64,000 nt of DNA from Vitrella brassicaformis CCMP3155 (lineage: Eukaryota > Protista > Chromerida), in assembly GCA_001179505.1 (NCBI GenBank), contig CDMY01000200.1:62001-126000 (forward strand), in the 5' to 3' direction. Made by a program: the position numbers and the translations under genes. Under the pieces are notes generated by a model, which was not told the DNA's origin, did no database searches, and saw nothing but the letters and a program-made list of their open reading frames with translations. This document shows positions 5,493-26,214 of this stretch, piece by piece. How positions within the stretch are numbered: position 1 is the first letter of the stretch; every line of letters starts with the position of its first letter.

Positions 5493-6216
5493 CTCACTCA
5501 AACAGACACCAACAGCTGCACCGACCACACACACAGAGAGGCGACAAGAGATGGGCAGACACCTGCTGGATGTCTTGTGTCGTGTCTGTGCTCGCCCCAC
5601 CTAGCTATGAGTCAAATGGTACAAAGGCACTCAATCAGTCCGCCCCGTCACCAAGGCCGACCTGCAGAACACGACACACAACACACGAAGGCCGCACATC
5701 ACCTGACGACTAGTGGTGAACGAATCGCCGTACCGTCGGATGGCTCTCTCCTGCTAAGCGCCGCGATGATAATTCCCCAGAGAAGGCCTCCAGCGATGGG
5801 AAGGAGGCCCGTCCGTCCAAGAGAAATGTCAGAGTGATAGCCAAACGGATGGGCGGAGGGATGGACGTGACCTCAGTGAGTCCCTCCCTTCGTCATCTTT
5901 CCTTCCCCTTCCTCCTCTCCCTGTGCCTCGTCTGCGAGCTTTTTGATCCGACCGCCGAGAAAGGAGGTGACAAAGAACCCCGTTTGAAGAGATCTATGAC
6001 AGGCAGCACACGAGCAGGCAATCTGGATCGACAAAAGCTGAAAGTGACGGCGAAAAACCGACACGAGCGACCCTGGCCGCGAAGTAACCCAGCCGTCGGT
6101 CGTTTGAGAGGCCATTTTTTGACGTTTTGAGCCTTCCCGCGATACGTTTTGAGCCTTCCCGCGATGGCGCAGCCTCAGCCCGAAGGTATCAATGCGCAGA
6201 CGGCTCGACAGTTACC

Positions 6217-8232
6217 ATGGAAAAGCCGAACGTTGCATGTGCTGCAGGCAAGGCATCTGTGGCCACCGGCGAGTCAGCCACGACCTCTCAGCAGCAGCAG
6301 CCGTCGGGTCCCCTCGCCATGGCAACAGCGGCTGCCGTCGGCATCACGGGCAATGGCAATGGCAACGGCGGACACGAGCCTGACATCAGCTCAGCTGCCG
6401 GCGGATGGATGGATGGATGTCCTCTCTTCCGCGTGTTGTCGTCGCTGCAGTGTCTGCTGGTGAGGGTCGTGTGTACGGGCAGCGGGAGTGGAAACTGATC
6501 ACCCCGTGGCTCAAGGGTGCTGGACACACACACGGCACATCCACCATCCACAGCGAGCCGTGTTTGCAATGGTCCTCCTTGGCTGTGTATGGTCTGTGTG
6601 TGCAGTTGGTGACAAGGTGAGTGTGCTCAACGCCAATCCGCTGTACGTGGAGGCCGAGTGCGTCGAGGGCGACCGCAAGGGCGTCACCGGCAGGTTCATG
6701 TCCAAATGCGTCAACTCCGACAACACATTCGTCGGTACGTCGGCAGCCGCCCAAAGCGCAGAGAGGGGGAGGGAACTATGCAGAGCGGTCTGGTGTGTTG
6801 TGTTGTTGGGTCTGTCAGGTGAGATCGTGATGCCTAGTGGTGGTGGTGACGTTAGTGCTGCTGCTGCTGCGGGTACGAATTTCAATACTCAGACGATAAC
6901 CGACACACACACCTATGAGGCCTCCTCCGTCTCCTCCGTGTTGCAGGTTCGTTCTCGATGGCGTATCCCGGTCCGTCTGTGTCGGCCTACCCCGCCGTGC
7001 AGACCGCACTCAGCCACTACGGCTACTACCCAACGCCATACAACGGAGGAGAGGGTGAGGGGAGCACACCGACACGCTGGACGAGGACGGGTGTACACGT
7101 GTGTCTGCCCCTTTGGCAGGTCCGCGTGTGCCGGGGGCGGGTACCATGGTGCAGGAGGTGATCGTGGAGAGACCCAATGGCGGCGTCATGCAGGGTGAGT
7201 GGGTGGACAGAGGGGCGCGGGAGGAGGGTGGCGGCATCGGGTCATACGTCTGTGTGTCTGTGTGTCTGTCTGTCTGTCTGTTGTGTGTAGGTTTCCGTCC
7301 GATGGTTGGTGACATGCCGAGCTACGCTGCGCCCTTCACAAGCATGCCCGGCTACTTGGCTTACCTGACAGGTACATGGCCCTCCCCCCTCTCCCCTTCC
7401 CCATCCCCGCACACACATGTCCGTGTGCAACGATCCCATCCACCCCCCTGTGTGTGTGTAGATGCTGACGAGAAGGCCAAGGTGATGAGTAAGTTGTTGA
7501 GCGCTACGGCCCCTGCCGACATCAGAGCGGCGGTGCAGGAGTACATCCAGCCCATTCTGCCCGTCGCCTGGGTATCCAAAGTCTGCGCCAACATGGTCAT
7601 CGAATACTGCAAAGCCAAAGTAAGCCGGGATGGCTGGATGGACACAAGAGACCGAGACACATTGCGTGTGTTGGCTTCCCCTTTGTCAGCTGACGTCTGA
7701 GGTGCTGGTGGGTCTGGGGAGCGACCCCGCTCCCCCGGCCAAGGCCATCGCACTCGTGCAGGGGCTCTCCGCCGCCCTGCCGTCGCTCACCGAGACCGCC
7801 CCGCCCCCCGACAGCAACACGCCCCTGGCCATCCTGACAACGCCCGCATTCCACAAGGCCATCGCCGACGTAGACATCGACGCCATCGACGAGAACACAT
7901 ACACAAAGCTGCGGGACCTCCTCATGTCCGAGTACGGAACTAACGAAGAGGTCATTGTGGTCATTATGTCCCTCCCTGTGTGTGCATGTTGTCAATGCAG
8001 TTCTGAGTTGGTCAACACGTCCTACGTGTATCTGCTGGCGCTGGTGTGGGTGGCGGTGATGCTCCTGCGCAAGACCAAGTACACCAACATCCAGCTGCAG
8101 CAGGAGGATCTGGAGCTGTCGACGGACGGCATCGTGGGGGTGGGGCTGGAGGCGTGCTTTGCCCCACTGCCAGTGGGCAGCGGCACGGCCGGCAAGGATG
8201 AGAAGGGCGGAGAGGGGGAGGGGGACAAGTGA
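6217..8232 (+). CDS. Multi-exon gene: SH3-like N-terminal exons, Pro/Tyr-rich linker, helical region and C-terminal TM segment (possibly disrupted)
   Basis: Spliced VSAGEGRVYGQREWKLITPWLK|VGDKVSVLNANPLYVEAECVEGDRKGVTGRFMSKCV resembles an SH3 fold. Phase-compatible exons follow, ending YVYLLALVWVAVMLL...EGDK* at 8232. The first donor, present in copy 2 (TACG|GTAAG), has lost 3 bp here. Confidence 0.6.
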
Positions 8233-8930
8233 GTGTCTCTCTCACACACATCACACACATAAGGGAGGGGGTATCTGGGGAGTAGTCAGACGGACGGTAG
8301 CCTCGGCAGTTTTTGCAATGAATCCATCCATCCATCTGTGTGTCCGTTGGATCCTTCAGTGCGATGTTTGTGCAGTCTGACGGCATGAGACACCGATCTC
8401 AATCGTATGCATGTGTGAATGGATGGATGGATGTGTGTGTGTGTGTGTTTGTCTTCTCCTTTGCCGCCCTGCCTGCCAATCGATTCGCCGTGTCTGGACG
8501 TCGCCTCTCCGTGCTTCACCCACCCAGAGGGACGCCTCCTGCCTGCCTGACTGCCTTCCATTTTCTGGCTAAGTCGTCCGTGTGTGTGGTTTGGGTTGTC
8601 CGTGTGTGTGCGTGCGTGTAGACCGTTTGCCGACACTTCGGCATGGAGCGACTGGAGGGATGGAATCAGTTCTGATTGGCGCACACACAACAAGTCACAC
8701 AAACGGACAAATACCACAACGGACACCCTCCCTGTTTACTCAGCTAGATGAAGATCATCATGCAGATGACTAATTGCGTGCGCTACAGCAATGACTGTCC
8801 ATCCAAAGGCATCCCGAATCACGCCATACGACAAACACACACTTAGTACGCACCTTGGGGCACCACACGTGCCTACCTACAGTCACTCCCCCTCCCTCCC
8901 TCCCTCCCTCTTTGTGTGTACAGCAGACCC

Positions 8931-10612
8931 CTATGCAGCCACCACCTTCTGGCGGACGAGCGCAGCTGTGCGGGGGTACCGCTGATCTGGGCGGCGCTTC
9001 CAAGCGACGGGGGGCTCCGTGGTGCAGATCTTCAGGCTCGAGTCAACGCGGACCAGGAAATCATCGGCCGCCTTGTCCCCACAGAGAATGAGGATCGTCC
9101 CATCCCACTCCATACTTGCGCCGTCGACCGACCACTCGTCCGCTTTGCGGCAGCCCTTCCACTGGCCCCGTGGCTGCCGCATGACGTCTTGGGTGAGCTG
9201 GTACTCCTTGGGAGGTGGAATGATGAGGTCATCTGGGAGCGTGAAGTGGGGGCGCAGACGAAAGTCGAACCCGTTCACGAAATCCCTGTCGATCAAAACG
9301 ACGATGATATCCGTGAAGGAAGAGTACACGTACTCGTCACCTGCAGACAGACAGCAGAAATGGAAAGGATCCATGCGCTCTGCGTAACCTCTCTCGGCTG
9401 CTCACGTTTGGTCGGCGGGTCGGGATCAGTCAAATCGATGCTGACGTAGGTCAGGGGGTCTGTTGACCAGTCGGGCCAGCCCAGATAGTCCTGGCCGTTG
9501 ACACGGCTCAGATCCACACACTGGCGGACACGGTGACTGAATAGCGAGTACTGGCGCACCGCCGGGGGCCGCGTGTCGAAGACCGCCCGGCTGCCCGCCT
9601 GCCGCAGATCGTGTGCCGTGATGGTGATGGGCAGAGAGGGGAGGCGGTGGCTGTTCTTGAGGTAGTAGATGAGCGACACACAGCGGTCCCAGCAGCCGCC
9701 CTCCTCGATGACATACAACACCCGCAACAGATAACCCTCCCTGGTGTCGACCAGCCGCAGCACGTCCACCAGGTCATACCAGATTAGACGGCACATTATG
9801 CCCAGGCAGACCGGCAACAATATGCCGAGATGCCATCTCATGGCGACAATGACCGGCTGAACGGAAGACTCGTCGCTCGGGGGCCACATCCAGGCGATGC
9901 AGATCTCAGAGATGAAAAGCAACGCCAGAGCACAATCGAAGCAGATCACGCCGCCGGACCGCAGAAGGTCAAATGCGTCGCCATACGCCACCGAAAACTG
10001 CCGAAACGCTCGCACGACGAAGGACGCCTCCCCAAGCCATCGGATGGCCACGTCAATCACAAGAAACGGAACCACCCAGGCGAGAAGGTAGAGAAGCCCC
10101 TGGAAATCCGCGGGAACACAGCCAGCTGCTGCACCAGAAACGGTGTCAGGACGACGGCCCAGCTGTGGATGGACATGTAAATGAAGATGAAGACGCGGAA
10201 ACCCACGGCTACTTGAACGAACGAGAGTGGAGACCGCACTGAAGATCGCCGCCATCCACTGCAGCAGAATCTGCAGGACCGTCTCGCACCGCTTCTGGTA
10301 GGTGAGCACTCCACTAAGGCCCTTCTCGCGAATGGCCGCGTCGAGGCGGTGCGTCAGGTTGACCTCGCTGACCAGCTGGCAGCCGACGCTCTTGGACGAG
10401 GCTCGAAGGGCGACGCAGTCATATGCCGTCAGGGAGGCCAGCAGCCGCCTCTCCACATCCTCAGGCAAGCCGACCAACGAGCACGCATCGGCGTCCGTCT
10501 GACGTGCACACACACACCCCCGCAGACCCGATAGACCCAGTGGATGCAGGAGTGGCCATGTGTGAGTGGAGTGCTCTCTTACCATTGGTGCCCCTGCTCC
10601 GCTACTCGTCAT
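8931..10612 (-). CDS. F-box-like multi-pass membrane protein, copy 1 (contains compensating frameshifts)
   Basis: Exons 10612-10583, 10498-9406 and 9340-8931. N-terminal SLVGLPEDVERRLLASLTAYDCVALRASSKS fits the F-box consensus. Several hydrophobic segments follow. Confidence 0.7.
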
Positions 10613-10895
10613 CAGATCCCGCCAGCTCTACTAGATCCTGCACCAAGCACAGCCACATATATATGTGCACGGCGTGCTGGTTGTGTTGTTGTTCTTCGTG
10701 TTACCGTGGGCACTGTGTTTGCGCACCGGCATCTGCCGCGATAGAGGATGAGCCCAGGGATGCAAGTATCAGTGACTGTCCTCCGTTCAATGACCACACT
10801 CGAGAGTCAGATCCGATCAGCTGCGTACGCAATGCGCGTCAGATCCCCTTTTCTGCCCCCATCTCCCTTTCCCCTTCCGCCACGCGGGCTTCGAT

Positions 10896-12607
10896 GGAAC
10901 CCCCGCGAACGCGGGTCGACGAACGGGTACGAGGGGGTAGGGGCCCCCTCGTAACGGAAGGCGATCGGAAAGGGACACCTTACAAAATGTCCGGGATCGA
11001 AAGGTACAAAATAAACCAGTGATCGCCAGTGGCCAGTGGTTGACCCTTAGGGTATCCGTCAAAAGGCGGCTGGGCAGTGTGAGGCGATTTGGCAGCCATT
11101 CCTGAAGATCTGGGGAAGCCGAATGAAGAGGTGCTTGCTCGTGAACGACGATGCTGGCCGAGAAACCGAAAATCGGCTGCACTTGTGTGTGATCTGAAGA
11201 GAGGGCACGGACAGCGAAGGGAGGTGGTGAGTCGGACGACGCAATGTCGCCCCCTCCCCCTTGAATGGGGGAGGGGGCTGCAAAAGGTCAGTATCCATCA
11301 GTCAGGGGTCACAGGCAGAAGAGAGCACGTCGACCACAGACCGATTGAAGGCGATGATGGCCGTCACGCAGCATTCTGGCACGCAGATCTACTCTCTGAG
11401 CACTCCTGTGTCTGCCTGGCAGGTGTGTTGATGTTTCGTTTGGCCGGCCGCATTGCCGCTTTCTCCCTAATTGCACGGTGAGCTGATGGCTGTCATGGAG
11501 GATTCTGGCACACAGATCTAGTCGTCTGAGCGCTCCTGTGTTTGCCTGGCAGGTGTGTCGGTGTTTCGTTTGGCCGCATTGCCGCCTTCTCTACTGCACG
11601 GTGAGCTGATGGCCGTCTCGCAGGATTCCGGCACACAGATCTACTCGTCTGAGCGCTCCTGTGTTTGTCTGGCAGGTGTGTTGGTGTTTCGTTTGGCCGC
11701 ATTGCCGCCTTCTCTACTGCACGGTGAGCTGATGGCCGTCACGCAGGATTCCGGCACATAGATCTAGTCGTCTGAGCGCTCTTATGTTTGCCTGGCAGGT
11801 GTGTTGATGTTTTGTTTGCCGCATTGCCGCCGTCTCTACTGCACGGTGAGCTGATGGCCGTCACGCAGGATTCCGGCACAGAGATCTAGTCGTCTGAGCG
11901 CTCTTTTGTTTGCCTGGCAGGTGTGTTGATGTTTTGTTTGCCGCATTGCCGCCGTCTCTACTGCACGGTGATCGCATGAGCTGATGGCCGCGACGCAGTA
12001 TTCCAGCTTATACACATATGCTCCCACATGTGTGCTCCGGTATGCGGGTCCTCTCGCATTCATGTGTATGCGCCATTGATTCGTGCATCCACAGCATCTG
12101 AGCACAAAGCTCTTGGCGTGTTTTATCGTTAATTAATACGCCGACGGATGGGAATGCAGTGAGTGTCTATACAGCGTACAGGGCATGTCGAGCGGGTCAG
12201 CTATATCTGGGTCAGAAGGATAGAAGTGCGAGAGATGTCTGACTACTGCTAAAAGTCTGTTGGGGCCGGTCCGCCGCTCCTCTCCCTTGCTTGTGTCGCA
12301 CCCTAGCGGTGGGATACCGGTGGTGTAGGATTCATATTGTGTCTTTCTTGGCCGTCCCTCCCTCTATCCCAGTCTGTCTCCCTCCATGCTTCTCTTCACG
12401 CCTCCCTTCCAATCGCCTTTTTGCTACCTGCCACGCCCTGTGCCTGCCTTTTTTTATTATGGTATCGCGAAGTCCCACGCGGCAGGTCTTTTTTGCAGAT
12501 CTGCCACGCTTACGATTAATGATGGGGGGGAGGGGGAAGATTGAGACAAACAGAAGCTGCCGTGTGAACAAACCCCGAAAAGCATGAGAAACCACACGCG
12601 TTCCTCC
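10896..12607. mobile_element. About 1.7-kb non-autonomous insertion with target-site duplication
   Basis: Absent from the paralogous site (21326-21340, gcttcgatcgcctcg). Flanked by TCGAT at 10891-10895 and 12608-12612. Ends are GGAAC (10896) and GTTCC (12600-12604). No transposase ORF. Confidence 0.8.
11355..12000. repeat. Tandem array of about 123-bp units (5 full plus 1 partial)
   Basis: Units begin TGATGGCCGTCACGCAGGATT at about 11355, 11484, 11607, 11730, 11852 and 11982. The units are contiguous, with no unique spacers. Confidence 0.95.
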
Positions 12608-12784
12608 TCGATCGCCTCGACGCGGGAAATTAGGAGGCGGACAGCACACCCTTCTGAGTAGATATAAGACAACCAGCGGGCAAGGAGGCAAACGGAATCG
12701 AGAAACCTTCATTCGATTCATTAATTCCTATTCCTGACTTCATGTCGCCTTCTGCCTGGAGCAGCCTTGTGGCCCGTCGGCAGC

Positions 12785-13432
12785 ATGGCTATGGACAATT
12801 TCCTCAAGTTCTTCACCTGCCAGGTGTGCCAGGAGATATACATACGAATGCAAGTCGTACGTCGCCCCCTGCGGCCACTCCATCTGCCTCGGCTGCTGCG
12901 CAAGCCTCACGGACAACAAGTGAGTGACCGACATGAAGGACCTGGGTACGCCACTCTCACTCGTCATTGTGCAGGTGCCCGACGTGCCGCGTGGCCCTTC
13001 CGCCCGCGAGAGAGCGCAAGTTTAGCGTGGATCTGCTGAATGCGGCGCTGAGTGTTGAAGGCGTCACGGAGAGGGAGCGGGAGAAGATCGCCGAGGGGGC
13101 GCCGGCCAAGTTCAGGCAGGAGAGCACCGTCATCGCGCTATTCGTCAAGAACCTCAAAGGTGCGGCGGTTGAGAGGGCGGCGTGGCGCCTCAGGTGGCCC
13201 TCTTCCACGTGTGTCCGTGTGTTCAGGTGCAACGATGTGCTTTGACATCCGTCCGTCGGCCACTGTGAGGAAGCTCAAGGAGATGGTGAAGGACCGAGAG
13301 GGCATCGAGATTGCCCACCAGCGGCTGATCTATGCGGGCAAGCAGCTGGACGACAATGACAAGACGCTCAGGGACTACGGCATCCAGAAGAACGACACCG
13401 TGCACCTCGTCCTCCGGCTGAGAGGAGGCTAA
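12785..13432 (+). pseudogene. RING-ubiquitin fusion, copy 1, RING exon frameshifted
   Basis: [17 protein letters not shown] is followed by a net 2-bp loss (TACATACGAA vs TACTCGGACGAA in copy 2) that breaks the RING frame. Exons 2-3 are intact and end HLVLRLRGG*. Confidence 0.85.
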
Positions 13433-14366
13433 GCGGACTGATGGCCCATTCATTTATCAGTGTGACCCACCCGTCGTCAATGCCACTGCATGCGCACTGT
13501 ACTCTCTTCTTGATGGCATCTCTTTTTTGACGCAGCGCAGCCAGCAGGGAAGTTTCTCGTGTGTGTATTGTAGCGGTGGTGGTGATGCGGTCGTGATGGT
13601 GGGGTGTTTGCCGACAGTGGCACACACACGAGAGAGAGTGTTCCTTTCACGTTTATCCCTTGGACACCTTTTTCACTGTCCGACAGCACGGGTGAGGTTG
13701 TGCGTAGAGGACTCAGCGTCGCACAAGAGGTGACGCCCGTGTGTGTGGCCGATCGTATGAAGGGACATTCATTAATGCATTCGTCGTATGCACACTCACG
13801 AGAGAGAGATAGAAGAGATCCCTTGACACACAACACAACACACATGCACACGCTCACACGCCCTACACAGCCCCCTCCGGTGACAGCAAACGTCTGCTCA
13901 CATGCAGGCAGCAGCTAAGCCATCGCCGTACGTGTCAGTGGCTGGGTGAGTGATCACGCGATGACATCCCCCATCGACCCTGCCTGCCTCCCTCCGCCCC
14001 GCCCTCTCTACTCCCCCACCGCCCGGCGCCATCCAGAGAGATATACCACGCCAATGGCAGACAGACACACAGGCGGGAAGCAGAAGCAATCGATCAAAGA
14101 GCACCAGCCGTTCCCTCCAGCCTCCCCCGCCCTCATCTTTCTGTGTGCCTCTCTCATGCGACGCGCTTGATGCCTCGTCACATTCAGCTCCACCACACGT
14201 CAACCAAACACAGCCACGTCCAACCGACCCACACCCCTCACGCCACAACACACCACACACACAGCCCACCACTACTGTCCATTGCATCATCGCCATTCCC
14301 GCTGTCCGCTGCTGATGTGGGCTGGTGTGAGTTCTGGGCCGCTGCTGGTGCTGGTGCTGGTGTGGG

Positions 14367-16727
14367 CTACCGGAATGCGGCCCCCAGCTGCTGCCATGTG
14401 AACTGGCAGTCGGCATCGCCCAGATGGGTGTTGAAGCCCTTGACCACCGCCCCATCCGCCAGCCCCCACTTGGCCGCCTCGTCCAGCCTGGCCCGATGCA
14501 CCACCTCAGGCAGACCCACACGGCCACGTGTGTGCACCGCCTCACGCGGACGGCTGTCGACACCCTCCAGCTCGAAGCACCGCAGCTGCGGCACACGCAC
14601 CACCTGGCCGCCCACATCGGCCGTCCCGCCCACCACCTCCCTGTTGCTGCTGGCCTGGTACACTGCCGACTTGACGAAGCGCTCCGCTGCCGCACACACA
14701 CGGCGGGCCATGTCGCTGTGCCGCACACCGATGGCCTCACTGACGGCCTCCTGGGCGGCATCCATGTCGAAGAGGTATGACGCGATGCGCCAGCCAAAGA
14801 CGGGGGCCTCCTGCGGGCCGACGGCCAGCCGGGGGGTCAGGAGGGCCGCGAGGGAGCGGTGGGGGGCGAGGGCGGCGTTGACGGCCACCATGACGGCAGC
14901 GGGCAGCTCGTTGAGCACCGCCGCATGCTCCGTCAGCACCAGCTGGCGGCCACGGCGGTCCCTTTGTGTGACTGTGGAGATGGTGTTGATGTCGGCCCCC
15001 GCCCGCAGCAGGCTGCGGATGGTGAGCTTGTAGTTGTCGATCTTGGCTCGATACCGCTCCTTGGCCGGCTCTGGTGTGTCCGGGTCCTGGAGCAATTGAG
15101 TGCGGTGGTCGAGCTCGTAGGCAGCCCAGGCGAGGGGCGTGTCGCCAGAGTTGTCCCGTCTGTTGATCTCGGCAGCGGGCAGCTTGCGGCAGAGGTAGTC
15201 GGCCACGTGGGGAGAGCCACACTCTGCCGCCCAGTGCAGTGGCGTCCATCCGTTGCCGTCGGCTGCCGTCATGTCGGCCCCGTTCGCCGTGATGAGATCC
15301 AGGTAGCTGTCGATGAAGCACTGGGGATAGCGCCCTTCCGCTTGTATGGCTGCCCTGTGCACCAGGTTTTTGCCCCAGACGTCTCGTTCGGCAGCGAGGG
15401 TGGGGTCTCGTGTGATGAGTTGCCGATACATCGACAGCAGCAGCTCCAGATACTGCGGGGGAGGCGGACGCATGGCATAGGGCAGCTCCATCACCATGGG
15501 TGCGTCTGGTGGACGTAGGTCGATTCCGTGCCGCGCCGTCAGGATGTCGAATGCCGTCCGGTTGCCATACGCAATCGCCAATTGGAGGGGCGTCTGTTGG
15601 GGATGATCGGCTGCCGCATTGGGGTCGGCTCCTCCGTCGAGGAGTGCGATCAGGACGGCCGATTGCAGCTCGTCAGACGACCACTTTGGCAGGCAGACAA
15701 GACGGTCATCACCCTCATCGGCTTCTGCTTGGATGGTCGGGACGGCATAGTCCGAGTTGTTGTCAATGGCGAGATGGACCAGCGAGTAGCCGTAGACGGC
15801 ACGACGCATGCTGCCCTTCTGCCGCAGTCGAGGCTCCACATGGGGGTCGGCACCCAGCTCGATGAGGTCGGTCGCGTGCTGCGGGGCGGAGATGGTGCGG
15901 CCGATGATGCCCAATGCCAGCTGCTTGGTGACCTCGTTGGTGCCCAGGGGGAATCGAGCCTCGATGTCGTTGGCTCCCACACAGCCGTCAGGCACCTCAA
16001 CCGTGGTGGCCACCAGCACAGGATGGCCTGCAACACACACACACAGCCACCACACGGCACACACAGTGAAGGAATGTGTGTGAGGATCACATCCTCTCGC
16101 GTCTGTCTGTCTGTCTGTCTGGCGTACCGTCCTCCTCATAGCCGTCGTCTTCATCGCTCTCGTTGTCGTCATCGATGCCGTCGTCGTCGTCGCCCAGCGG
16201 CCCACCGTCGTCATCACTGTCGTCCTGTACACCATCCTGCCACAACAAAGGGAAAAAGTGAGAAACACTGCTGACGGTCGTCGCATGGGGCGGCTGTTGC
16301 TGTCAATGAGTGACTCACCGATTCGGATTCGCTATCAGCTGCCGCCTGTAGACCTTCTCCCTCCTCCTCGGCCATCTCGCCGTCCTCCTCCTCACCCAAC
16401 AAATCTGAAACGAAGACATACCAACACATTCGTCAACAAAGCAAAAATGAGTGTGCCACTGGTGTGTTGATGAGTCTGTGTGGCGTGCTGTTGACTCACC
16501 ACTGTCAGCGTCATTGTCGTCTTGCCCGTCTGGCTGCCCGCCGCCGTTGTTATCCTCCTCAGCCACATCGTCTGCACACACAATCGAAGGCACACACACA
16601 CACACGTGTGGCGCTGATGCTGTGTGTTTGATGTGTCACATTCATCTGTGTGTGGCGTACCCGCATCGCCACCGTCACCGTCCGCCATGGCAGCGGAGGC
16701 CATCTGGCTGTCGTGACCTCCAGACAT
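14367..16727 (-). CDS. Ankyrin-repeat family paralog A2 (apparently intact)
   Basis: Acidic micro-exons from ATG 16727. The large exon lies within the uninterrupted ORF 14367-16286, with TPLQLAIAYGN, WTPLHWAAECGSPHVADYL and DTPLAWAA, plus the family C-terminal domain. Confidence 0.85.
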
Positions 16728-17427
16728 CTCACTCAAACAGACACCAACAGCTGCACCAACCACACACACACAGAGAGGCGACAAGAGATGGGCAGACACC
16801 TGCTGCATGTGTCGTGTGTGTGCTCGCCCACCTAGCTATGAGTCAAATGGTACAAAGGCGCTCAATCAGTCCGCCCCGTCACCAAGGCCGACCTGCACAA
16901 CACGACACCGACACACAAAGGCAGCAAGGCACATCACGACTACTGGTGAACGAATCGCCTGAGCGCGTACCGTCGGGTGGCTCTCTCCTGCTAAGCGCCG
17001 CGATGATTAATTCCCCAGCGAAGGCCTCCGGCGACAGAGAGGAAGGAGGCCCGTCCATGAGGAAACGTCAGAGTGATAGCCAAACGGATGGGCGGAGGGA
17101 TGGACGTGACGTCAGGAGTCCCTCTGGGACGGACGTGACGTCAGGGAGTCCCTCGTCTTTCCTCTCCCTTTTCCCTTTCCCTTTTGCCTGTCTGCGAGCT
17201 TATTCGATCAGACCGGTGCGAGAGCGATAAAGGATCCCGTTTGAAAAGATCTGAGACAGGCAGCACACGAGCAGGCAATCCGGACCGACAAAAGCTGAAA
17301 GTGACGGCGAAAAACCGACCCGAGCGACCCTGGCCGAAGCGACCCAGCCGTCCTTCGTCATTTTGGTTCTCGCGATGGCGCAGCCCCAGTCCGAAGGTAT
17401 CAATGCTCAGATGGGTCGACGCTAACC

Positions 17428-17951
17428 ATGGAAAAGCCGACTGTTGCATGTGTTGCAGCCAAGGCATCTGTGGACGCCGGCGAGTCCGCCACGACCTCTC
17501 AGCAGCAGCAGCCGTCGGGTCCCCTCGCCATGGCAACAGCGGCTGCCGTCGGCACCACGGGCAATGGCAATGGCAACGGCCGATACGGTAAGCCTGACAT
17601 CAGCTGCCGGCGGATGGATGGATGGATGGATGGATGTCCTCTCTTCCGCGTGTTGTCTGTCGTTGCTGCAGTGTCTGTTGGTGAGGGTCGTGTGTACGGG
17701 CAGCGGGAGTGGAAACTGATCACCCCGTGGCTCAAGGGTGCTGCACACACACGGCACACCCACCATCCAGAACGAGCCGTGTTTGCAATGGTCCTTGGCT
17801 GCGTGTGGTCTGTGTGTGCAGTTGGTGACAAGGTGAGTGTGCTGAACGCCAATCCGCTGTACGTGGAGGCCGAGTGCGTCGAGGGCGACCGCAAGGGCGT
17901 CACCGGCAAGTTCATGCCCAAATGCGTCAACTTCGACAACACATTCGTCGG
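17428..17951 (+). CDS. SH3-like 5' exons, copy 2 (fused downstream to histone H1 exons)
   Basis: Near-identical to 6217-6730. All donors are intact (TACG|GTAAG, AAGG|GTGCT, GTCG|GTACGT). Confidence 0.6.
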
Positions 17952-18123
17952 TACGTAACACATTCGTCGGTACGTCGAATGTGTTATCGAAAACTAGGAG
18001 GAGGGGGTGAGGTGGACACACCGACGACCTGGATGGGGGACGCCGCATCAGTGCGTGTGCGTGGGAGACATGGGGTATGGCGATGAACGAGGGTGCTCTG
18101 TGCGTGGGTGTGTGCATTTTCAG

Positions 18124-18708
18124 ATGTTGCTGAGGCCGGCGCTGCCCCGAAGGCGAAAGTAGGCAGCACCACAGCACTACACAGCACCCCTCCATGGCCA
18201 TGCACACCACACACCACACACCACCACACCATACGGAGGGAGATCCAGACGATGACCGTCCTGTGCTCCACCCTTCCCTTGTGTGTCATTGTCGTGTGTG
18301 GTGCAGGCCAAGGGGAAGGGCGAGGCCAAGTCTGGTGGTGGCAAGGCGGGTGCTGCCCCGAAGCACCCTTCGTTTGAGGAGATGATCAAGGAGGCCATCG
18401 GCACACTCAAGGACCAGTCAGGCAGCAGCCTGTTCGCCATCAAGAAGTTCATCCAGGCCAAGTACTCCCTCGACGTCGAGGACGCACGCACCAAGCACCA
18501 CCTCAGCCGCTCACTCTATAAGCCAAGAAACTCATCATGGTATGTACAGGGGGAGGGTAGATGATAATGGTGTGGTGGGATGGTGTGGTGTGGTGTGGTG
18601 TGGTGGGTGCATCTCGACGTGTGGCGTGTGTTGGTGTGTTGTGTGCAGATCAAGGCGTCGTACAAGTTGAACATGAACGTGGGCTGCCAAGATTGGCCGC
18701 CGCTGAGG
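18124..18708 (+). pseudogene. Linker histone H1 winged-helix (H15) fragment with a frameshift
   Basis: [36 protein letters not shown]...HLSRSL and a later exon IKASYKL match the H1 globular domain. The linking KKLIM is in a shifted frame, so splicing gives TG|A stop. Confidence 0.8.
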
Positions 18709-19358
18709 GTACGCACGCACCCCACACAAACCACACACCACACCACACCACACCTTCAGTGTGATGTATGTGTAGTCTGACGACATGAGACACTGATCTC
18801 TATCGTATGCATGTGTGGATGGATGGATGGATGGATGTGTGGATGTGTGTGTTTGTCTTCTCCTTTGCCGCCCTGCCTGCCAATCGATTCGCCGTGTCTG
18901 GGCGTCGCCTCTCCGTTCTTGACCCATGCAGAGCGACGCCTCCTGCCTGCCTGCCTTCTATTCCCTGACTGGCTAAGTCGTCCGTGTGTGTGGTTTGGGG
19001 TGTCCGTGTGTGTGCGTGTGTGTGGACCGTTTGCCGACACTTTGGCATGGAGCGACTGGATGGATGGAGTGAGAATTGATTGATGCACACACAGCAAGTC
19101 ACACGAACGAACAAATACCGCAACAGACAGACATGCCCCCACTCCCTGTCTACTCAGCTAGATGAAGATCATCATGCAGATGACTAATGCATGCGCTGCA
19201 GCAATGACTGACTGTCCATCCAAAGGCATCCCGAATCACGCCATACGACAAACACAGACTTAAGTACCAGCACCTTTGTGGCACCACACGTACCCACTCA
19301 CCTGCAGTCACTCCCCCTCCCTCCCTCCCTCCCTGTGTGTATGGCCAGCAGCCGACCC

Positions 19359-21054
19359 CTACGCCGCCACCTTCTGGCGAACGAGCGCAGCTGTCTGGGG
19401 GTACCGCTCATCTGGGCGGCGCTTCCAAGCAACGGGGGGCTCCGTGGTGCAGATCGTCAGGCGCGAGTCAACGCGGACCAGGAAATCATCGGCCGCCTTG
19501 TCCCCACACAGAATGAGGATCGTCCCATCCAACTGCATACTTGCGCCGTCGACCGACCACTCGTCCGCTTTGCGGCAGCCCTTCCACTGGCCCCGTGGCT
19601 GCCGCATGACGTCTCGGGTGAGCTGGTACTGTTTGGGAGGTGGAATGATGAGGTCATCTGGGAGCGTGAAGTGGGGGCGCAGACGAAAGTCGTTCCCGTC
19701 CACGAAATCCCTGTCGATCAAACGGACGATGATATCCGTGAAGGAAGAGTATACGTACTCGTCACCTGCAGACAGACAGCAGACATGGAAAGGATCCATG
19801 CGCTCTGCGTGATCTCTCTCGGCTGCTCTGCTCACGTTTCGTCGGCGGGTCGGATTCGGTCAAATCGATGCTGACGTACGTCAGCGCACCGGTGTCTGTT
19901 GACCGGTCGGGCCAGCCCAGATAGTCCTGGCCGTTGACACGGCTCAGATCCACACACTGGCGGACACGGTGACTGAATAGCGAGTACTGGCGCACCGCCG
20001 GGGGCCGCGTGTCGAATACCGCCCGGCTGCCCGCTCGCTGGAGATCGTGTGCCGTGATGGTGATGGGCAGAGAGGGGAGGCGGCGGCTGTTCTTGAGGTA
20101 GTAGATGAGCGACACACAGCGGTCCCAGCAGCCGCCCTCCTCGATGACGTACAACACCCGCAACAGATAACCCTCCCTGGTGTCGACCAGCCGCAGCACG
20201 TCCACCAGGTCATACCAGATTAGACGGCACATTATGCCCAGGCAGACCGGCGACAACATGCCGAGATGCCATCTCATGGCGACAATGACCGGCTGAACGG
20301 AAGACTCGTCGCTCGGGGGCCAAATCCAGGAGATGCAGATCTCAGAGATGAAAAGCAACGCCAGAGCACAATCGAAGCAGATCACGCCGCCGGACCGCAG
20401 AAGGTCACATGCGTCGCCATACGCCACCCAAAACTGCCGAAACGCTCGCACGACGAAGGACGCCTCCCCAAGCCATCGGATGGCCACGTCAATCACAAGA
20501 AACGGAACCACCCAGGCGAGAAGGTAGAGAAGCCACTGGATGGGCCACTGAATCCACGGGAACACAGCCAGCTGCTGCACCAGAAACGGTGTCAGGACGA
20601 CGGCCCAGCTGTGGATGGACATGTAAATGAAGATGAAGACGCGGAAACCCACGGCTACTTGAACGAGAGTGGAGACCGCACTGAAGATCGCCGCCATCCA
20701 CTGCAACAGAATCTGCAGGACCGTCTCGCACCGCTTCTGGTAGGTGAGCACTCCACTAAGGCCCTTCTCGCGAATGGCCGCGTCGAGGCGGTGCGTCAGG
20801 TTGACCTCGCTGACCAGCTGGCAGCCGACGCTCTTGGACGAGGCTCGAAGGGCGACGCAGTCATATGCCGTCAGGGAGGCCAGCAGCCGCCTCTCCACAT
20901 CCTCAGGCAAGCCGACCAACGAACACGCATCGGCGTCCGTCTGACGTGCACACACATCCCCACGCAGACCCGACAGACCCAGTGGATGCAGGAGTGGCCA
21001 TGTGTGAGTGGAGTGCTCTCTCACCATCGGTGCCCCTGCTCCGCTACTCGTCAT
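19359..21054 (-). CDS. F-box-like multi-pass membrane protein, copy 2 (intact)
   Basis: Same three-exon structure as copy 1. Continuous hydrophobic region VAVGFRVFIFIYMSIHSWAVVLTPFLVQQLAVFPWIQWPIQWLLYLLAWVVPFLVI. Confidence 0.75.
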
Positions 21055-21508
21055 CAGATCCCGCCAGCTCTACTAGATCCTGCACAAAGCACAGCCACAT
21101 ATATATGTGCACGGCGTGCTGGTTGTGTTGTTGTTCTTCGTGTTACCGTGGGCACTGTGTTTGCGCACCGGCATCTGCCGCGATAAGGATGAGCCCAGGG
21201 ATGCAAGTATCAGTGACTGTCCTCCGTTCAATGACCACACTTGAGAGTCAGATCCGATCAGCTGCGTGCAATGCGCGACAGATCCCCTTTTCTGCCCCCA
21301 TCTCCCTTTCCCCTTCCGCCACGCGAGCTTCGATCGCCTCGACGCGGGAAATTAGGAGGCGGACAGCAGACCCTTCTGAGTAGCTATAAGATGACCAGCG
21401 GGCAAGGAGGCGAACGGAAGCGAAAAGCTTTCATTCGATTCATTAATATTCCTATTCCTGACGTCATGTCGCCTTCTGCCTGGAGCAGCCTTGTGGCCCG
21501 TCGGTAGC

Positions 21509-22161
21509 ATGGATATGGACAATTTCCTCAAGTTTTTCACGTGCCAGGTGTGCCAAGAGATATACTCGGACGAACGCAAGCCGTACGTCGCCCCCTGCGG
21601 TCACTCCATCTGCCTCGGCTGCTGTGCAAGCCTCACGGACAACAAGTGAGTGACCAACATGAATGGCCTGGGTATACCGCCACTCTCACTCGTCATTGTA
21701 CAGGTGCCCGACGTGCCGCGTGGCCCTCCCATCCGCGAGAGAGCGCAACTTCAGTGTGGATCTGCTGAATGCGGCGCTGAGTGTTGAAGGCGTCACGGAG
21801 AGGGAGCGGGAGAAGATCGCCGAGAGGGTGCTGGCCAAGTTCAGGCAGGAGAGCACCGTCATCGCGCTGTTCGTCAAGAACCTCAAAGGTGCGGCGGTTG
21901 AGAGGGCGGCGTGGCGCCTCAGGTGGCCCTGTTCCACGTGTGTCTGTGTGTTCAGGTGCAACGATGTGCTTTGACATCCGTCCGTCGGCCACTGTGAGGA
22001 AGCTCAAGGAGATGGTGAAGGGCCGAGAGGGCATCGAGATTGCCCACCAGCGGCTGATCTATGCGGGCAAGCAGCTGGACGACAATGACAAGACGCTCAG
22101 GGACTACGGCATCCAGAAGAACGACACCGTGCACCTCGTCCTCCGGCTGAGAGGAGGCTAA
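21509..22161 (+). CDS. C3HC4 RING finger fused to a C-terminal ubiquitin domain ending LRLRGG (intact, 173 aa from ATG 21515)
   Basis: Exons 21515-21645, 21704-21888 and 21956-22161 splice in phase. RING: CQVC-x14[10 protein letters not shown]8-CPTC. Ubl: [10 protein letters not shown]...[10 protein letters not shown]...TLRDYGIQK...HLVLRLRGG*. Confidence 0.92.
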
Positions 22162-23061
22162 GCGGACTGATGGCCTATTCATTCATCAGTGTGACCCAAC
22201 CGTCGTGAATGCCACTGCATACGGACTGTACTCTCTTGATGGCGTCTCTTTTTTGACGCTTCCTTCTATTCGATGAGATGAATGAAACGCATTGCCATGC
22301 AGCGCAGTCAGCAGGGTTAATTGTGTGTATTGTAGCGGTGGTGGTGGTGGTGGTGTGGGTGTGTCAGTGGGTTGTTTGCCGACAGTCGCACACAAGAGAG
22401 AGAGAGAGAGTGTGTAAGGCTGTGCGTAGAGGACTCAGCGTCGCACGAGAGGTGACGCCCGTGTGTGTGGCCGATCGTATGAAGGGACATTCATTAACGC
22501 ATTCGTCGTATGCACACTCACGAGAGAGAGATAGAAGAGATCCCTTGACACACAACACAACACACATGCACACGCTCACACGCCCTACACAGCCCCCTCC
22601 GGTGACAGCACACGTCTGCTCACATGCCCGCAGCAGCAGGTAAGCCATCGCCGTACGTGTGAGTGAGTGGGTGAGTAAACACGCGATGACATTCCTCCCT
22701 CATCGGATCCTGCCTGCCTGCCTGCCTCCCTCCGCCCCGCCCTCTCTACTGTCCCACCGCCCGGCGCCATCCAGAGAGATGTACCACGCCAATGGCAGAC
22801 AGACACACAGGCAGGAAGCAGAAGCAATCGATCAAAGAGCACCAGCCGTTCCCTCCAGCCTCCCCTGCCCTCATCTTCATGTGTGCCTGTCTCGTGTAAG
22901 GCGCAGTGGTCTCTATGTGACGCGCTTGATGCCTCGTCACATTCAGCTCCACCACACGTCGATCAAACACAGCCACGTCCAACCGACCCACACCCCTCAC
23001 GTCACAACACCACCACCACACAGCCCACCACTACTGCTCCGTTGCATCATCGCCATTCCAG

Positions 23062-25444
23062 CTATCCGCTGCTGTGGGCTGGTGTGGGCTGTTGGGTCGC
23101 TGCTGGTGCTGGTGCTGGTGTGGGCTGGTGCAATGCGGCCCCTAGTTGCTGCCATGTGAACTGGCAGTCGGCATCGCCCAGGTGGGTGTTGAAGCCCTTG
23201 ACCACCGCCCCATCCGCCAGCCCCCACTTGGCCGCCTCGTCCATCCTGGCCCGATGCACCACCTCACGCAGACCCACACGACCACGAGTGTGCACCGCCT
23301 CACGCGGACGGCTATCGATACCCTTTAGCTCGAAGCACTGCAGCTGCGGCACACGCACCACCTGGCCGCCCACATCGGCCGTCCCGCCCACCACCTCCCT
23401 GTTGCTGCTGGCCTGGTACACCACCGAGCGGACGAAGTGCTCCGCTGCCGCGCACAGACGGCGGGCCATGTCGCTGTGCCGCACACCGATGGCCTCACTG
23501 ATGGCCTCCTGGGCGGCATCCATGTCGAAGAGGTATGACGCGATGCGCCAGCCGAAGATGGGGGCCTCCTGCGGGCCGACGGCCAGCCGGGGGGTCAGAA
23601 GTGCCGCGAGGGAGCGGTGGGGGGCGAGGGCGGCGTTGACTGCCACCATGACGGGGGGACCCACCTTGTTGAGCACTGTGGCGTACTCGGTCAGCACCAC
23701 CTGGCGGCCACAGCGGTCCCTCTCTGTGGCTGTGGGGATGCTGCTGATGTCGGCCCCCGCCCGCAGCAGGCTGCGGATGGTCAGCTTGAAGTTGTCAATA
23801 TCGGCGCGATACTTCTCCTTGAAGTGCTCGGGTGTGTTGGGGTCCTGCAGGTGTCGGATGCGGCGATCGAGCCATCCGGCAGCCCAGGCGAGGGGCGTCT
23901 GGCCTTGGTTGTCCTGTCTGTTGATCTGGTCAGCGGGCAGCTTGCGGCAGAGGTAGTCGGCCACATGGGGAGAACCGATGAAGGCCGCCTTGTGCAATGG
24001 CGTCTGCCCACCGGCATCGCCTGCCGTAATGTCGGCGCCGTTCGCTGTGATGAGGTCCAGGTAGGCGTTGATGAAGGACGGGGGATGGCGCCCCTTTGAG
24101 TTGATGGCTGCCCAGTGCACCAAATTGAAGGCGCCGTTGTCGTGTTCGGTGGCGAGGGTGGGGTCTCGTCGGGCGAGTCGCTCATACATCGACATGAGCC
24201 GCTGCAGATACTCGGGGGGAGGCAGACGCAGTGGGCGGGGCAGCTTCATCACCATGTGAGCGTCTGCTGCGTACAGGTCGATGCCTTGACGAGCCCTCAG
24301 GATGTCGAAGGCCTTCTGATTGCCGGATGCAATCGCCACTTGGAGGGGCGTCTGTTCGGTCTCGTCGGCTGCCACATTGGGGTCGGCTCCTCCGTTGAGG
24401 AGTGCGCTCAGGACGGCCGACTGCAGCTCGTCAGACGACCAGTGTGGCAGGGCGACGGGACGGGGGACAGCAAAATCGTTTTCGGCTTGGATGGTCCGGA
24501 CGGTGCAGTCCGACTTGTTGTCAATGGCGAGACACAGGGGTGGGTAGCTGTAGACCGCACCACTGCTATCCCTGACCACACCGGTCATGACATCTGGGTC
24601 GGCGCCCTGCTGCCGATGAGGTCGGTCATTTGCCGTGCGTCGGTGAAGCGCCGGCCGATGATCCACCGTGACAGCTCCTTGGTGGCGTCGTTGGTGCCCT
24701 TGAGGAACCAAGCCTCTAGCTCATCGAGTCCGATGTGGCCGTCCGGCACGGGAACAGTGGGATCCGCCAGGCCACTGAGAGGATGACCTGCAACACACAC
24801 ACAGCCACCACACAACGGACAGTGATTCTGCGCGCAGGATCTTTTCTCGCGTCTGTCTGGCGTACCTTCCTCCTCATATTCAATGTAGTCGTCGTCGAAG
24901 TATCCGTCATCGATATCGTCATCTTGGTCGCCATCACCATCCTCGTCCTGCATGCCATCCTGACACACAACAAAGAGGCAGAGGGGCGGAAAATGACTCA
25001 AGGGCCTCCATCGCATGGACCAGTGTTGGTGTCGATGAGTGCCTCACCGATTCGTCTCCATCGGCTGCCTGCGGACCATCATCACCGTCGGCCATCTCAT
25101 TGGCCATCGCGCCCTCCTGCTGCTGCTGGCCGCCTGGACACCAACACACACACCCTCACCGACCTGGCGTGAGTGTGCTGCTGATGTGAGTGCGCGTCGA
25201 ATGGTCTGTGTGGCAGGTCTGATCACTCACCGCTGTCTGAGCCATTGCAATCTGATTCCTCCGCCTGTCCCCTGCCGCTATGCTCCTCCTCAGCCACATC
25301 CTCTGAAGACACACACACACACGTGTGGCGCTGATGCTGTGTGTTTGATGTGTCACATTCATCTGTGTGTGGCGTAAACGCATCGTCACCGTCACCGTCA
25401 GCCATGGCAGCGGAGGCCATGTGGCTGTCGTGACCGTCGGACAT
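23062..25444 (-). pseudogene. Ankyrin-repeat family paralog A3 with a frameshift near 24610
   Basis: The two halves are in different frames (ORF 24585-25016 ends DLIGSRAPTQMS*; ORF 23062-24711 resumes QGADPD). The sequence has +2 bp relative to A1 (ATCGGCAGCAGGGC vs ATCGGGCAGGGC). Confidence 0.75.
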
Positions 25445-26214
25445 CTCACTCAAACAGACACCAACAGCTGCACCGACCACACACACAGAGAGGCGACAAG
25501 AGATGGGCAGACACCTGCTGCATGTGTCGTGTCTGTGCTCGCCCCACCTAGCTATGAGTCAAATGGTACAAAGGCACTCAATCAGTCCGCCCCATCACCA
25601 AGGCCGACCTGCACAACACGACACCGACACACAAAGGCAGCAAGCCACGTCATGACTCGTGGTGAACGAATCGCATCGCACTCACTGCCGGATGAGAGCT
25701 GCTAAGCCGCGCGATGATCAAATTCGCTCGTCAGCCAGAGCAGGCCAGTTCACTGCCGCCAGCCGAGAAATGTCTTAAGAATGATGGCTGAAGTGGATGG
25801 AGGGACTCAACCACTTCTCTGTTTGTCACAGCGGCTCACGGCGAGGGCCTCTAAGCAGCGAAGCTCCGCTCCCTCGTCCGCCTGTTAGGTTAGAGCTGAA
25901 GGAGCCAAACCCATCTCACATGGGGGCCAGAGAAGTCCTTAGATGGCTCCGCCGAAAGATCTAGGCCAAGCACAAGGTGGCGACTTTAAGTCAAGGAGGC
26001 CACAGTTTGCGGTGGTGCGGCGAATCGATGAGTATCTGACACCGATAGAGTCACAGTGCGCCTGTCTGTCCCCTGACTGCACGCACAGCAGCACTACGCT
26101 GCGCATGGCAGCAGCTCACCATCCCGCACCATGCTCTTAGCACACTCACCAGACACCAGACCAGATACCAACCAATGCATCTCACCACACACCACGCCCC
26201 GTTCCGCTGTCTGT

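What the first reader, a model, noticed from the sequence alone, without database searches (positions are those of the whole stretch)
21509..22161. RING E3 ligase fused to a potentially conjugatable ubiquitin (free C-terminal LRLRGG)
Seen: three in-phase exons give a 173-aa protein made of a complete C3HC4 RING, a short helical linker, and a ubiquitin domain as the extreme C-terminus ending RLRGG-stop. By hand alignment 40 of 76 positions match ubiquitin, keeping L8/I44/H68/V70, K6/K27/K48/K63 and R72. Established: natural ubiquitin fusions put Ub at the N-terminus to be cleaved off (RPL40, RPS27A), and Ubl domains inside E3s such as parkin lack a free GG. R72 is the residue that selects the ubiquitin E1 over the NEDD8 E1. 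Inference: the whole ligase could be adenylated and charged by E1 and covalently attached to targets, depositing an E3 on the substrate that then builds its own chains. It could alternatively act as an E1/E2/DUB decoy.
Basis: partly seen in the sequence, partly recalled or inferred. Interest (0 to 1): 0.88.

Follow-up and report, generated by a model that had tools for sequence, protein, structure and literature searches.

The report
RING ligase ending in conjugatable-looking ubiquitin
The alga Vitrella brassicaformis has a small gene that joins a RING ubiquitin-ligase domain to a ubiquitin-like domain ending in a free Gly-Gly, so the whole ligase might be attached to other proteins, but only its broken neighbouring copy is seen in RNA and no function has been tested.

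Summary
Three exons (21509-21645, 21704-21888, 21956-22161, +) encode 175 aa, or 173 aa from the second ATG. That shorter form is the public model CEL93951.1/A0A0G4EEY5 of Vitrella brassicaformis. The protein has a complete C3HC4 RING, a roughly 48-aa linker predicted as two helices, and a ubiquitin-like domain ending LRLRGG-stop.

New facts:
- The gene lies in an 11-kb tandem duplication. Its paralogue (12785-13432) has a 2-nt deletion inside the RING.
- The RNA contigs that confirm both GT..AG introns carry the paralogue's SNPs, so expression of the intact copy is not shown.
- The linker has no homologue among 1.84 billion representative proteins.
- The architecture is not unique. A U-box-Ubl family always ends at GG or GG plus one residue, and two metagenomic ESM Atlas clusters carry RING plus ubiquitin.
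- I found no paper describing a natural E3-Ub(GG) fusion. Engineered ones (UBAITs) are activated by E1/E2 and become covalently attached to partners.

Conjugation of the whole ligase is therefore chemically plausible and fits the sequence, but it is untested. I class it as a new variant of a known kind, of moderate interest.

The parts
21509..21645 (+). Exon 1 of copy A. ATG at 21509, second ATG at 21515; encodes the first six RING ligands.
   Evidence: the donor GTGAGT follows 21645.
21646..21703 (+). Intron 1, 58 nt, GT..AG.
   Evidence: joint 21645->21704 in RNA contig X1 (paralogue transcript with the same junction); absent from DNA runs X3/X4.
21704..21888 (+). Exon 2: the last RING CxxC plus the Arg that follows it, the linker, and the first strand of the Ubl.
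21889..21955 (+). Intron 2, 67 nt, GT..AG.
   Evidence: joint 21886->21954 (cut +2, i.e. 21888->21956) in RNA contigs X1 and X2.
21956..22161 (+). Exon 3: the rest of the Ubl, ending LRLRGG, then TAA at 22159-22161.
   Evidence: (PF00240 E 9e-21 on the exon alone).
21542..21716 (+). C3HC4 RING finger, residues 12-50 of the 175-aa protein, interrupted by intron 1.
21717..21860 (+). Linker, residues 51-98. Predicted as two helices at moderate confidence. No homologue outside this gene pair.
21861..22158 (+). Ubiquitin-like domain, residues 99-175, interrupted by intron 2.
   Evidence: pLDDT about 90.
12785..13432 (+). Paralogue, copy B (exons 12785-12919, 12975-13159, 13227-13432). A 2-nt deletion between 12840 and 12841 shifts the frame inside the RING. 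The public model P0005/CEL93947.1 (141 aa) bypasses the break with another donor and loses the RING. Copy B is transcribed and spliced.
14429..22723 (.). Second unit of a tandem segmental duplication; the first unit is 3202-13993 and a partial third is 23187-25725. Each full unit carries an ankyrin gene, a gene between the ankyrin and membrane-protein genes that differs between the two units (a 240-aa linker-histone model in the second, a 441-aa model without Pfam hit in the first), a membrane-protein gene and the RING-Ub gene.

Best explanation
Shown: this is a real, publicly annotated but uncharacterised Vitrella brassicaformis gene for a minimal RING-type E3. Its C-terminal domain is a diverged ubiquitin (about 51% identical) that keeps the E1/E2 recognition surface and ends in a free LRLRGG. 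It is the intact member of a tandem pair; the other copy is frameshifted in the RING.

Inferred mechanism:
- The ubiquitin E1 adenylates and thioesterifies the protein's own C-terminal Gly and passes it to an E2.
- The tethered RING binds that E2 and promotes discharge, so the whole RING-Ub is ligated to a nearby lysine. That lysine could be on a partner or on another RING-Ub molecule at K48 or K63.
- The attached RING can then recruit further E2~Ub.

In effect it would be a natural counterpart of the engineered UBAIT reagents: a self-transferring, single-use ligase.
For: The gene model and domains are established. The E1-relevant residues and the tail are intact. The last 10 residues are 9/10 identical to ubiquitin against 30/67 for the rest (Fisher p 0.014), so the tail has been preserved while the domain diverged. 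The branch to the Vitrella Ubl is long, 0.97 substitutions per site, so this is not a recent copy of polyubiquitin that has simply not yet decayed. The RING is most similar by sequence to RNF4 (4ap4). The Arg after the last Cys aligns with the RNF4 Arg in CPTCR, which from my own knowledge is the 'linchpin' that holds E2~Ub closed. The Ubl folds confidently with a floppy tail, and the linker is predicted as two helices. UBAITs show that E3-Ub(GG) fusions, RING E3s included, are E1/E2-activated and covalently captured on partners (PMC7056813). The independent U-box-Ubl family has 7 of 7 members ending at GG or GG plus one cap residue.
Against: There is no evidence that the intact copy is expressed. 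Both RNA contig sets carry only copy-B alleles at every A/B-discriminating site. Copy-A-specific exon-1 words occur in DNA runs but in no RNA run (only 8 words, so the test is weak). One of the two copies has already lost its RING, so the function is at least dispensable in double dose. The near-identity of exon 3 between the copies (1 of 206 nt, and 2 of 67 nt in intron 2, against about 7% elsewhere) looks like gene conversion rather than selection. No orthologue with this linker exists anywhere in the databases searched. The protein has no substrate-binding module. The RING part of the model is low-confidence. No biochemical data exist.
Confidence: 0.35

Rival explanations
1. The Ubl is never conjugated and works in cis as an integral domain of a minimal E3. 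It could supply the non-covalent 'backside' ubiquitin that stimulates UbcH5-type E2s, serve as a built-in chain acceptor on K48/K63 for self-ubiquitylation and turnover, or dock the ligase on proteasome or UIM/UBA receptors as the Ubls of parkin and Rad23 do.
For: The L8/I44/V70 patch, K48 and K63 are intact. Ubl-plus-RING proteins are common, for example the Atlas clusters of 355 and 391 aa with PF00240 plus zf-RING_2. The protein has no substrate-binding domain, which suits an accessory or regulatory protein.
Against: Integral Ubl domains normally lose the LRLRGG tail and do not sit at the extreme C-terminus. Here the tail is the best-conserved part and the stop follows GG directly. The analogous U-box-Ubl family also keeps GG at the end in all members.
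Confidence: 0.3
2. It is a young, lineage-specific chimeric gene of little or no function. It sits in an unstable tandem array, one copy is already a transcribed pseudogene, and the intact ORF of copy A persists by chance or gene conversion and makes little or no protein.
For: Copy B is frameshifted but is the copy seen in RNA. Copy A is not detected in RNA. The linker is an orphan. The A/B differences in the linker include Arg>Gly, Val>Ala and Leu>Pro.
Against: Copy A keeps a complete RING, both splice sites and an uninterrupted 175-codon ORF. The Ubl is anciently diverged yet retains its functional residues and tail. Roughly equal numbers of synonymous and non-synonymous A/B differences give a rough dN/dS near 0.35, not 1; this is my own count and the numbers are small. 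Similar small RING-plus-ubiquitin proteins recur in metagenomes.
Confidence: 0.25
3. It acts as a decoy or competitor. The protein is charged by E1/E2 or bound by DUBs, but it acts mainly by sequestering them or by capping chains: the N-terminus of its ubiquitin is blocked and K11, K29 and K33 are missing.
For: The same E1/DUB recognition determinants are present. The ubiquitin M1 is fused, so linear chains cannot be built on it.
Against: A catalytically complete-looking RING is unnecessary for a decoy. Nothing points to high expression.
Confidence: 0.07

Closest known systems
UBAITs (ubiquitin-activated interaction traps; O'Connor et al. 2015, as described in PMC7056813)
   Same: An E3 (HECT or RING) sits N-terminal to a ubiquitin with a free C-terminal GG. 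E1 and E2 activate the fused ubiquitin, and the whole fusion becomes amide-linked to proteins near the E3.
   Different: UBAITs are engineered, with affinity tags and full-length E3s that carry substrate-binding domains. Here the fusion is natural, the E3 is a bare RING, the ubiquitin is only about 51% identical to canonical ubiquitin, and no activity has been tested.
Ubl-domain E3s such as parkin, UHRF1 and HOIL-1L (type-II Ubl proteins)
   Same: A ubiquitin-fold domain and a RING-type domain lie in one polypeptide.
   Different: Their Ubl is N-terminal or internal, lacks an exposed GG and is not conjugated. Here the Ubl is the extreme C-terminus and ends LRLRGG-stop.
Ubiquitin precursor fusions (Ub-RPL40, Ub-RPS27A, polyubiquitin)
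   Same: Ubiquitin is genetically fused to another protein, with a conserved LRLRGG.
   Different: In those, ubiquitin is N-terminal and is released by DUB cleavage after GG. Here nothing follows GG, and no known protease cuts in front of ubiquitin, so the RING should stay attached.
U-box-Ubl proteins P0117, P0118 and P0121-P0125 (about 160 aa, from Logan/ENA assemblies; one lies on a 23% GC contig)
   Same: An E3 catalytic domain sits at the N-terminus, followed by a short linker and a C-terminal ubiquitin-like domain ending GG or GG plus one residue. They share the one-residue insertion in the 52-54 loop.
   Different: They carry a U-box rather than a zinc RING, and the linker is unrelated. 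A tree of the Ubl domains does not join them to the Vitrella Ubl, so they are probably an independent fusion. They are uncharacterised and their organism is unknown.
Ubiquitin-zinc RING finger fusions listed for Bigelowiella natans and Guillardia theta (PMC6332867)
   Same: Ubiquitin and a RING-like zinc finger are encoded in one expressed algal gene.
   Different: At least one has ubiquitin at the N-terminus and others carry two ubiquitin units. The order of domains is not stated in the text for the rest, and no function or conjugation was proposed or tested.

Membership tests
RING-type E3 ligase (C3HC4 RING finger) | Eight zinc ligands in cross-brace spacing, plus a match to the RING profiles | tested here: met
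   The pattern C-x2-C-x14-C-x-H-x2-C-x2-C-x8-C-x2-C spans residues 12-50. zf-RING_5 scores 33.7 bits against a cut-off of 27.9, and zf-C3HC4_3 scores 28.3 against 27.
RING-type E3 ligase (C3HC4 RING finger) | E2-binding and E2~Ub-activating residues (hydrophobic residue in the first CxxC, Pro in the last CPxC, linchpin Arg/Lys after the last Cys) | tested here: inconclusive
   By sequence only: CQVC, CPTC and the following Arg align with RNF4 CPIC...CPTCR in 4ap4. The RING part of the model has pLDDT of 39-59.
RING-type E3 ligase (C3HC4 RING finger) | E2-dependent ubiquitin-transfer activity | not testable with these tools
   This needs a biochemical assay.
Conjugatable (type-I) ubiquitin-family modifier | Beta-grasp ubiquitin fold | tested here: met
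   PF00240 at E 3.4e-23 covers the full profile length. The AF2 model of residues 97-170 has pLDDT of about 90 with the ubiquitin order of strands and helix.
Conjugatable (type-I) ubiquitin-family modifier | C-terminal Gly-Gly that is exposed or followed only by a short removable cap | tested here: met
   TAA follows GG directly in copy A and copy B, and in the copy-B RNA contigs.
Conjugatable (type-I) ubiquitin-family modifier | Determinants for the ubiquitin E1 (R42, R72, the L71-G76 tail, the L8/I44/V70 patch) | tested here: met
   All are identical to ubiquitin. That these residues specify UBA1 rather than the NEDD8 E1 is established knowledge and was not tested here.
Conjugatable (type-I) ubiquitin-family modifier | Small free modifier (free N-terminus, about 76-100 aa) | tested here: not met
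   A 98-residue RING-plus-linker extension precedes the domain, and no known processing site precedes the Ubl.
Conjugatable (type-I) ubiquitin-family modifier | Observed thioester intermediates and isopeptide conjugates | not testable with these tools
   This needs biochemistry or proteomics.
Integral (type-II) Ubl-domain protein | Ubl embedded in the protein without a usable C-terminal GG | tested here: not met
   The Ubl is terminal and ends LRLRGG-stop.
Ubiquitin precursor fusion (Ub-ribosomal protein, polyubiquitin) | Ubiquitin N-terminal to its partner, released by cleavage after GG | tested here: not met
   The domain order is reversed and nothing follows GG.
UBAIT-like self-transferring E3 (functional analogy; engineered class) | E3 domain N-terminal to a ubiquitin with a free GG, joined by a spacer | tested here: met
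UBAIT-like self-transferring E3 (functional analogy; engineered class) | E1/E2- and GG-dependent covalent attachment of the fusion to partners | not testable with these tools
   This is known for engineered UBAITs only (PMC7056813).

The most novel reading that the evidence does not exclude
Vitrella's RING-Ub, together with the independently evolved U-box-Ubl proteins and the metagenomic RING-plus-ubiquitin clusters, represents a natural class of 'self-conjugating' E3 ligases. The enzyme is itself the modifier: it is charged by E1/E2 through its own GG and deposited covalently on targets or on itself, forming branched poly-E3 assemblies. This would be a natural version of the UBAIT principle.
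Probability: 0.27. Interest if true: 0.85.

Novelty: new variant of a known kind. Interest (0 to 1): 0.55.

Why it matters
In every characterised pathway the ubiquitin ligase and the modifier are separate molecules. If this protein is conjugated, a ligase that is its own modifier would be a new logic: single-turnover, self-depositing E3s that seed chains where they land. It would also show that the trick invented for UBAIT reagents already exists in nature. The architecture seems to have arisen at least twice, with a RING here and a U-box elsewhere, and the GG end is conserved in the second family. That gives a comparative reason to test the idea. If the protein is not conjugated, this is one more lineage-specific domain shuffle in a genome that has several.

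Tried and rejected
1. Word-based search with the N-terminus plus linker and a full HMMER scan of 1.84 billion representatives with exon 2 both returned only the gene's own cluster.

2. A metagenome scan with P0142 gave six loci. They encode a 123-aa protein with a C-terminal RING sharing only the TDNKCPTCR stretch, with no ubiquitin domain. I rejected them as relatives.

3. A viral-contig scan with the E3-Ubl alignment gave at least 585 viral ubiquitin genes. None of the 80 best has an N-terminal extension over 25 aa or a RING pattern, so there is no sign of a giant-virus origin.

4. The shared one-residue loop insertion suggested common ancestry of the Vitrella Ubl and the U-box-Ubl family, but the tree does not support it. 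Those hits had also been selected by shared words, which is a bias.

5. I considered a plastid (SELMA/PUBL-type) ubiquitin. The protein starts directly at the RING with no signal or transit peptide, so I rejected this.

6. A ubiquitin-precursor role is rejected because of the domain order.

7. AF2 on the single sequence was useless (pLDDT 43). A 31-row alignment gave a good Ubl but a poor RING.

8. The divergently transcribed neighbour (19762-21054, -) looked F-box-like by eye, but it has no Pfam hit.

9. The full 175-aa spliced protein could not be handed to the large searches until the public model P0142 was found.

Full report
**Observation**

The stretch 21509-22161 (+) contains three exons: 21509-21645, 21704-21888 and 21956-22161. 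Both introns, of 58 and 67 nt, are GT..AG. Joining the exons gives an uninterrupted 528-nt reading frame of 175 codons ending GGA GGC TAA.

The three exon translations hit RING profiles (exon 1) and PF00240 ubiquitin (exon 3, E 9e-21). The full public protein P0142 gives ubiquitin at E 3.4e-23 (residues 99-171, full profile length). It also gives zf-RING_5 and zf-C3HC4_3 above their curated cut-offs (residues 9-50). All eight zinc ligands are present with canonical spacing.

Against a canonical ubiquitin unit, 39 of 76 positions are identical, with one extra residue in the 52-54 loop. K6, L8, K27, I36, R42, I44, K48, K63, H68, V70 and the whole L71-G76 tail are kept. K11, K29 and K33 are lost.

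**Organism and public annotation**

The window is part of contig CDMY01000200.1 of Vitrella brassicaformis CCMP3155 (GCA_001179505.1). The gene is already annotated as CEL93951.1 / UniProt A0A0G4EEY5, 'RING-type domain-containing protein', 173 aa. It is identical to my model from Met3 onward. It is a public but uncharacterised protein.

**A broken twin, and whose RNA it is**

The window holds a tandem segmental duplication. One unit spans 3202-13993, a second spans 14429-22723, and a partial third spans 23187-25725. Each full unit carries an ankyrin gene, a gene between the ankyrin and membrane-protein genes that differs between the two units (a 240-aa linker-histone model in the second, a 441-aa model without Pfam hit in the first), a membrane-protein gene and a RING-Ub gene.

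The upstream copy B has exons 12785-12919, 12975-13159 and 13227-13432. It is 94% identical in DNA and has a 2-nt deletion between 12840 and 12841. That position lies between the first CxxC and the CxH of the RING. Read from its ATG, copy B stops after 61 codons. The ubiquitin frame has no upstream ATG. The public model for B (P0005/CEL93947.1, 141 aa) escapes the frameshift by using another donor and has no RING. It looks like a workaround by the gene predictor, because the RNA contig includes sequence that this model treats as intron.

Two RNA contig sets (X1, X2) show both splice joints, and the DNA runs X3/X4 do not, so the introns are real. At every site that tells A from B, however, the RNA contigs carry the B allele. 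These sites are 21625, 21749/52/55, 21825/29/32, 21869, 22022, six 3'-UTR sites and a TCT insertion. Copy-A-specific exon-1 words are found in the DNA runs but in no RNA run. That test had only 8 sampled words, and contigs drop rare variants, so it is weak.

Splicing and the stop codon are therefore confirmed on the paralogue, whose junctions are the same. Expression of the intact copy is not shown.

Divergence between the copies is about 7% in the 5' flank, exon 1, intron 1 and the 3' UTR. It is only 0.5% in exon 3 and 3% in intron 2. Because the intron shares the low divergence, gene conversion of the 3' part is the simplest reading. Selection on copy B is less likely.

**Domains**

By sequence the RING is closest to solved RINGs of RNF4, RNF125, PML and TRIM proteins. 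In the RNF4 alignment the CPTC-Arg at the end of the Vitrella RING lines up with RNF4 CPTC-Arg. From my own knowledge, that Arg is the linchpin that holds E2~Ub in the closed, reactive state (Plechanovova et al. 2012, PDB 4AP4).

An AF2 model built with a 31-row alignment gives a confident ubiquitin fold (pLDDT about 90, residues 97-170) with a floppy tail. It predicts two linker helices (55-69 and 76-94, pLDDT 56-77) and a poorly defined RING, for which the alignment has no depth. The single-sequence model was useless.

The ubiquitin-like domain is not a fresh copy of polyubiquitin. It sits on a long branch of 0.97 substitutions per site. Yet its last ten residues are 9/10 identical to ubiquitin, against 30/67 for the rest (p 0.014).

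**Distribution**

The linker has no homologue. A word search and a full HMMER scan of 1.84 billion representatives return only the gene's own cluster.

The architecture is not unique, though.
- **U-box-Ubl family.** The ubiquitin search turned up a family of about 160-aa proteins with an N-terminal U-box and a C-terminal ubiquitin-like domain (P0117, P0118, P0121-P0125). Every member ends at GG or at GG plus one residue (K, Y or L), as modifier precursors do. One member lies on a 23% GC contig of unknown origin. A tree does not join their Ubl to the Vitrella one, so this is probably an independent fusion.
- **ESM Atlas clusters.** Two metagenomic clusters (62 and 94 members, 158 and 156 aa) carry ubiquitin plus RING profiles. 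They score 0.94 and 0.93 against P0142. I could not retrieve their sequences.
- **Algal fusions in the literature.** A survey of algal ubiquitin fusions lists Ub-zinc-RING fusions in Bigelowiella and Guillardia, without analysing them (PMC6332867).
- **Negative scans.** Scans of JGI metagenome contigs and IMG/VR viral contigs gave no further RING-Ub genes.

**Mechanism**

What is shown is the anatomy. What follows is inference.

Ubiquitin tolerates N-terminal extensions in activation and transfer. The direct precedent is the UBAIT method. E3-Ub fusions with a free GG, RING E3s included, are activated by cellular E1 and E2 and become amide-linked to proteins that bind the E3 (PMC7056813). Phrase searches for natural E3-ubiquitin fusions returned only UBAIT papers.

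The Vitrella protein has every element of a UBAIT. I therefore rank 'charged through its own GG and ligated as a whole' first, at about 0.35.

The rivals, in order:
- A non-conjugated cis-acting Ubl, acting as a backside activator of the E2, a built-in chain acceptor or a proteasome handle (about 0.3). The terminal, perfectly conserved GG tail counts against it.
- A decaying lineage-specific chimera that makes little protein (about 0.25). The broken but expressed twin, the missing RNA evidence for copy A and the orphan linker favour it. The intact ORF, the intact functional residues and the recurrence of the architecture count against it.
- A decoy for E1, E2 or DUBs (below 0.1).

**Comparison, novelty and score**

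The protein meets the sequence definition of a RING finger. It also meets the definition of a conjugatable ubiquitin-family member, except that it is not a small free modifier. It does not fit integral-Ubl E3s such as parkin, because of the terminal GG. It does not fit ubiquitin precursors, because the domain order is reversed.

I found no description of a natural E3 ending in a usable ubiquitin. The protein is already in public databases, related small RING or U-box plus ubiquitin proteins exist, and the principle is known from engineering. I rate it a new variant of a known kind.

Interest is moderate at 0.55. The idea is testable and would be striking if true. The present evidence is sequence only, and the intact copy has no demonstrated expression.

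**Limits**

Read laying could be used only once, and it works on assembled contigs for these runs.

Noticed in passing
window 3202-13993, 14429-22723, 23187-25725: Tandem segmental duplication of an ~11-kb unit carrying an ankyrin gene, a gene between the ankyrin and membrane-protein genes that differs between the two units (a 240-aa linker-histone model in the second, a 441-aa model without Pfam hit in the first), a membrane-protein gene and the RING-Ub gene. Blocks are 75-93% identical, and a partial third unit follows.
   Followed up: partly
window 10896-12607: A 1.7-kb insertion present only in the copy-B unit, about 175 nt upstream of copy B's ATG. It contains a tandem array with a period of about 123 bp (11355-12007, copies 82-90% alike). 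Copy B is still transcribed.
   Followed up: partly
window 12785-13432 (public model CEL93947.1 = P0005): The public 141-aa model for copy B uses an alternative donor inside exon 1 to skip a genomic 2-nt deletion. The RNA contig X1 includes sequence that this model treats as intron, so the model is probably an annotation artefact of a pseudogene.
   Followed up: yes
L001 992-1480, and proteins P0117, P0118, P0121-P0125: A family of about 160-aa U-box plus C-terminal ubiquitin-like proteins ending GG, GGK, GGY or GGL. They come from Logan/ENA assemblies; one lies on a 23% GC contig of an unidentified eukaryote. They appear to be undescribed.
   Followed up: partly
L003 1467-1838, L006 1800-2171 (JGI marine metagenome contigs): A 123-aa protein with a C-terminal RING that shares the TDNKCPTCR stretch with the Vitrella RING but has no ubiquitin domain. 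It is found on six near-identical contigs.
   Followed up: no
window 19762-21054 (-) and 9293-10612 (-): The divergently transcribed, co-duplicated neighbour is a multi-pass membrane protein. Its N-terminus looks F-box-like by eye (LPEDV...LL..L), but it has no Pfam hit at E<=1.
   Followed up: partly
window 22334-22360 and 22396-22412: (GGT)n and (GA)n microsatellites lie about 175-250 nt downstream of the stop. Contigs of all runs break or differ here, and copy B has a 41-nt deletion nearby.
   Followed up: no
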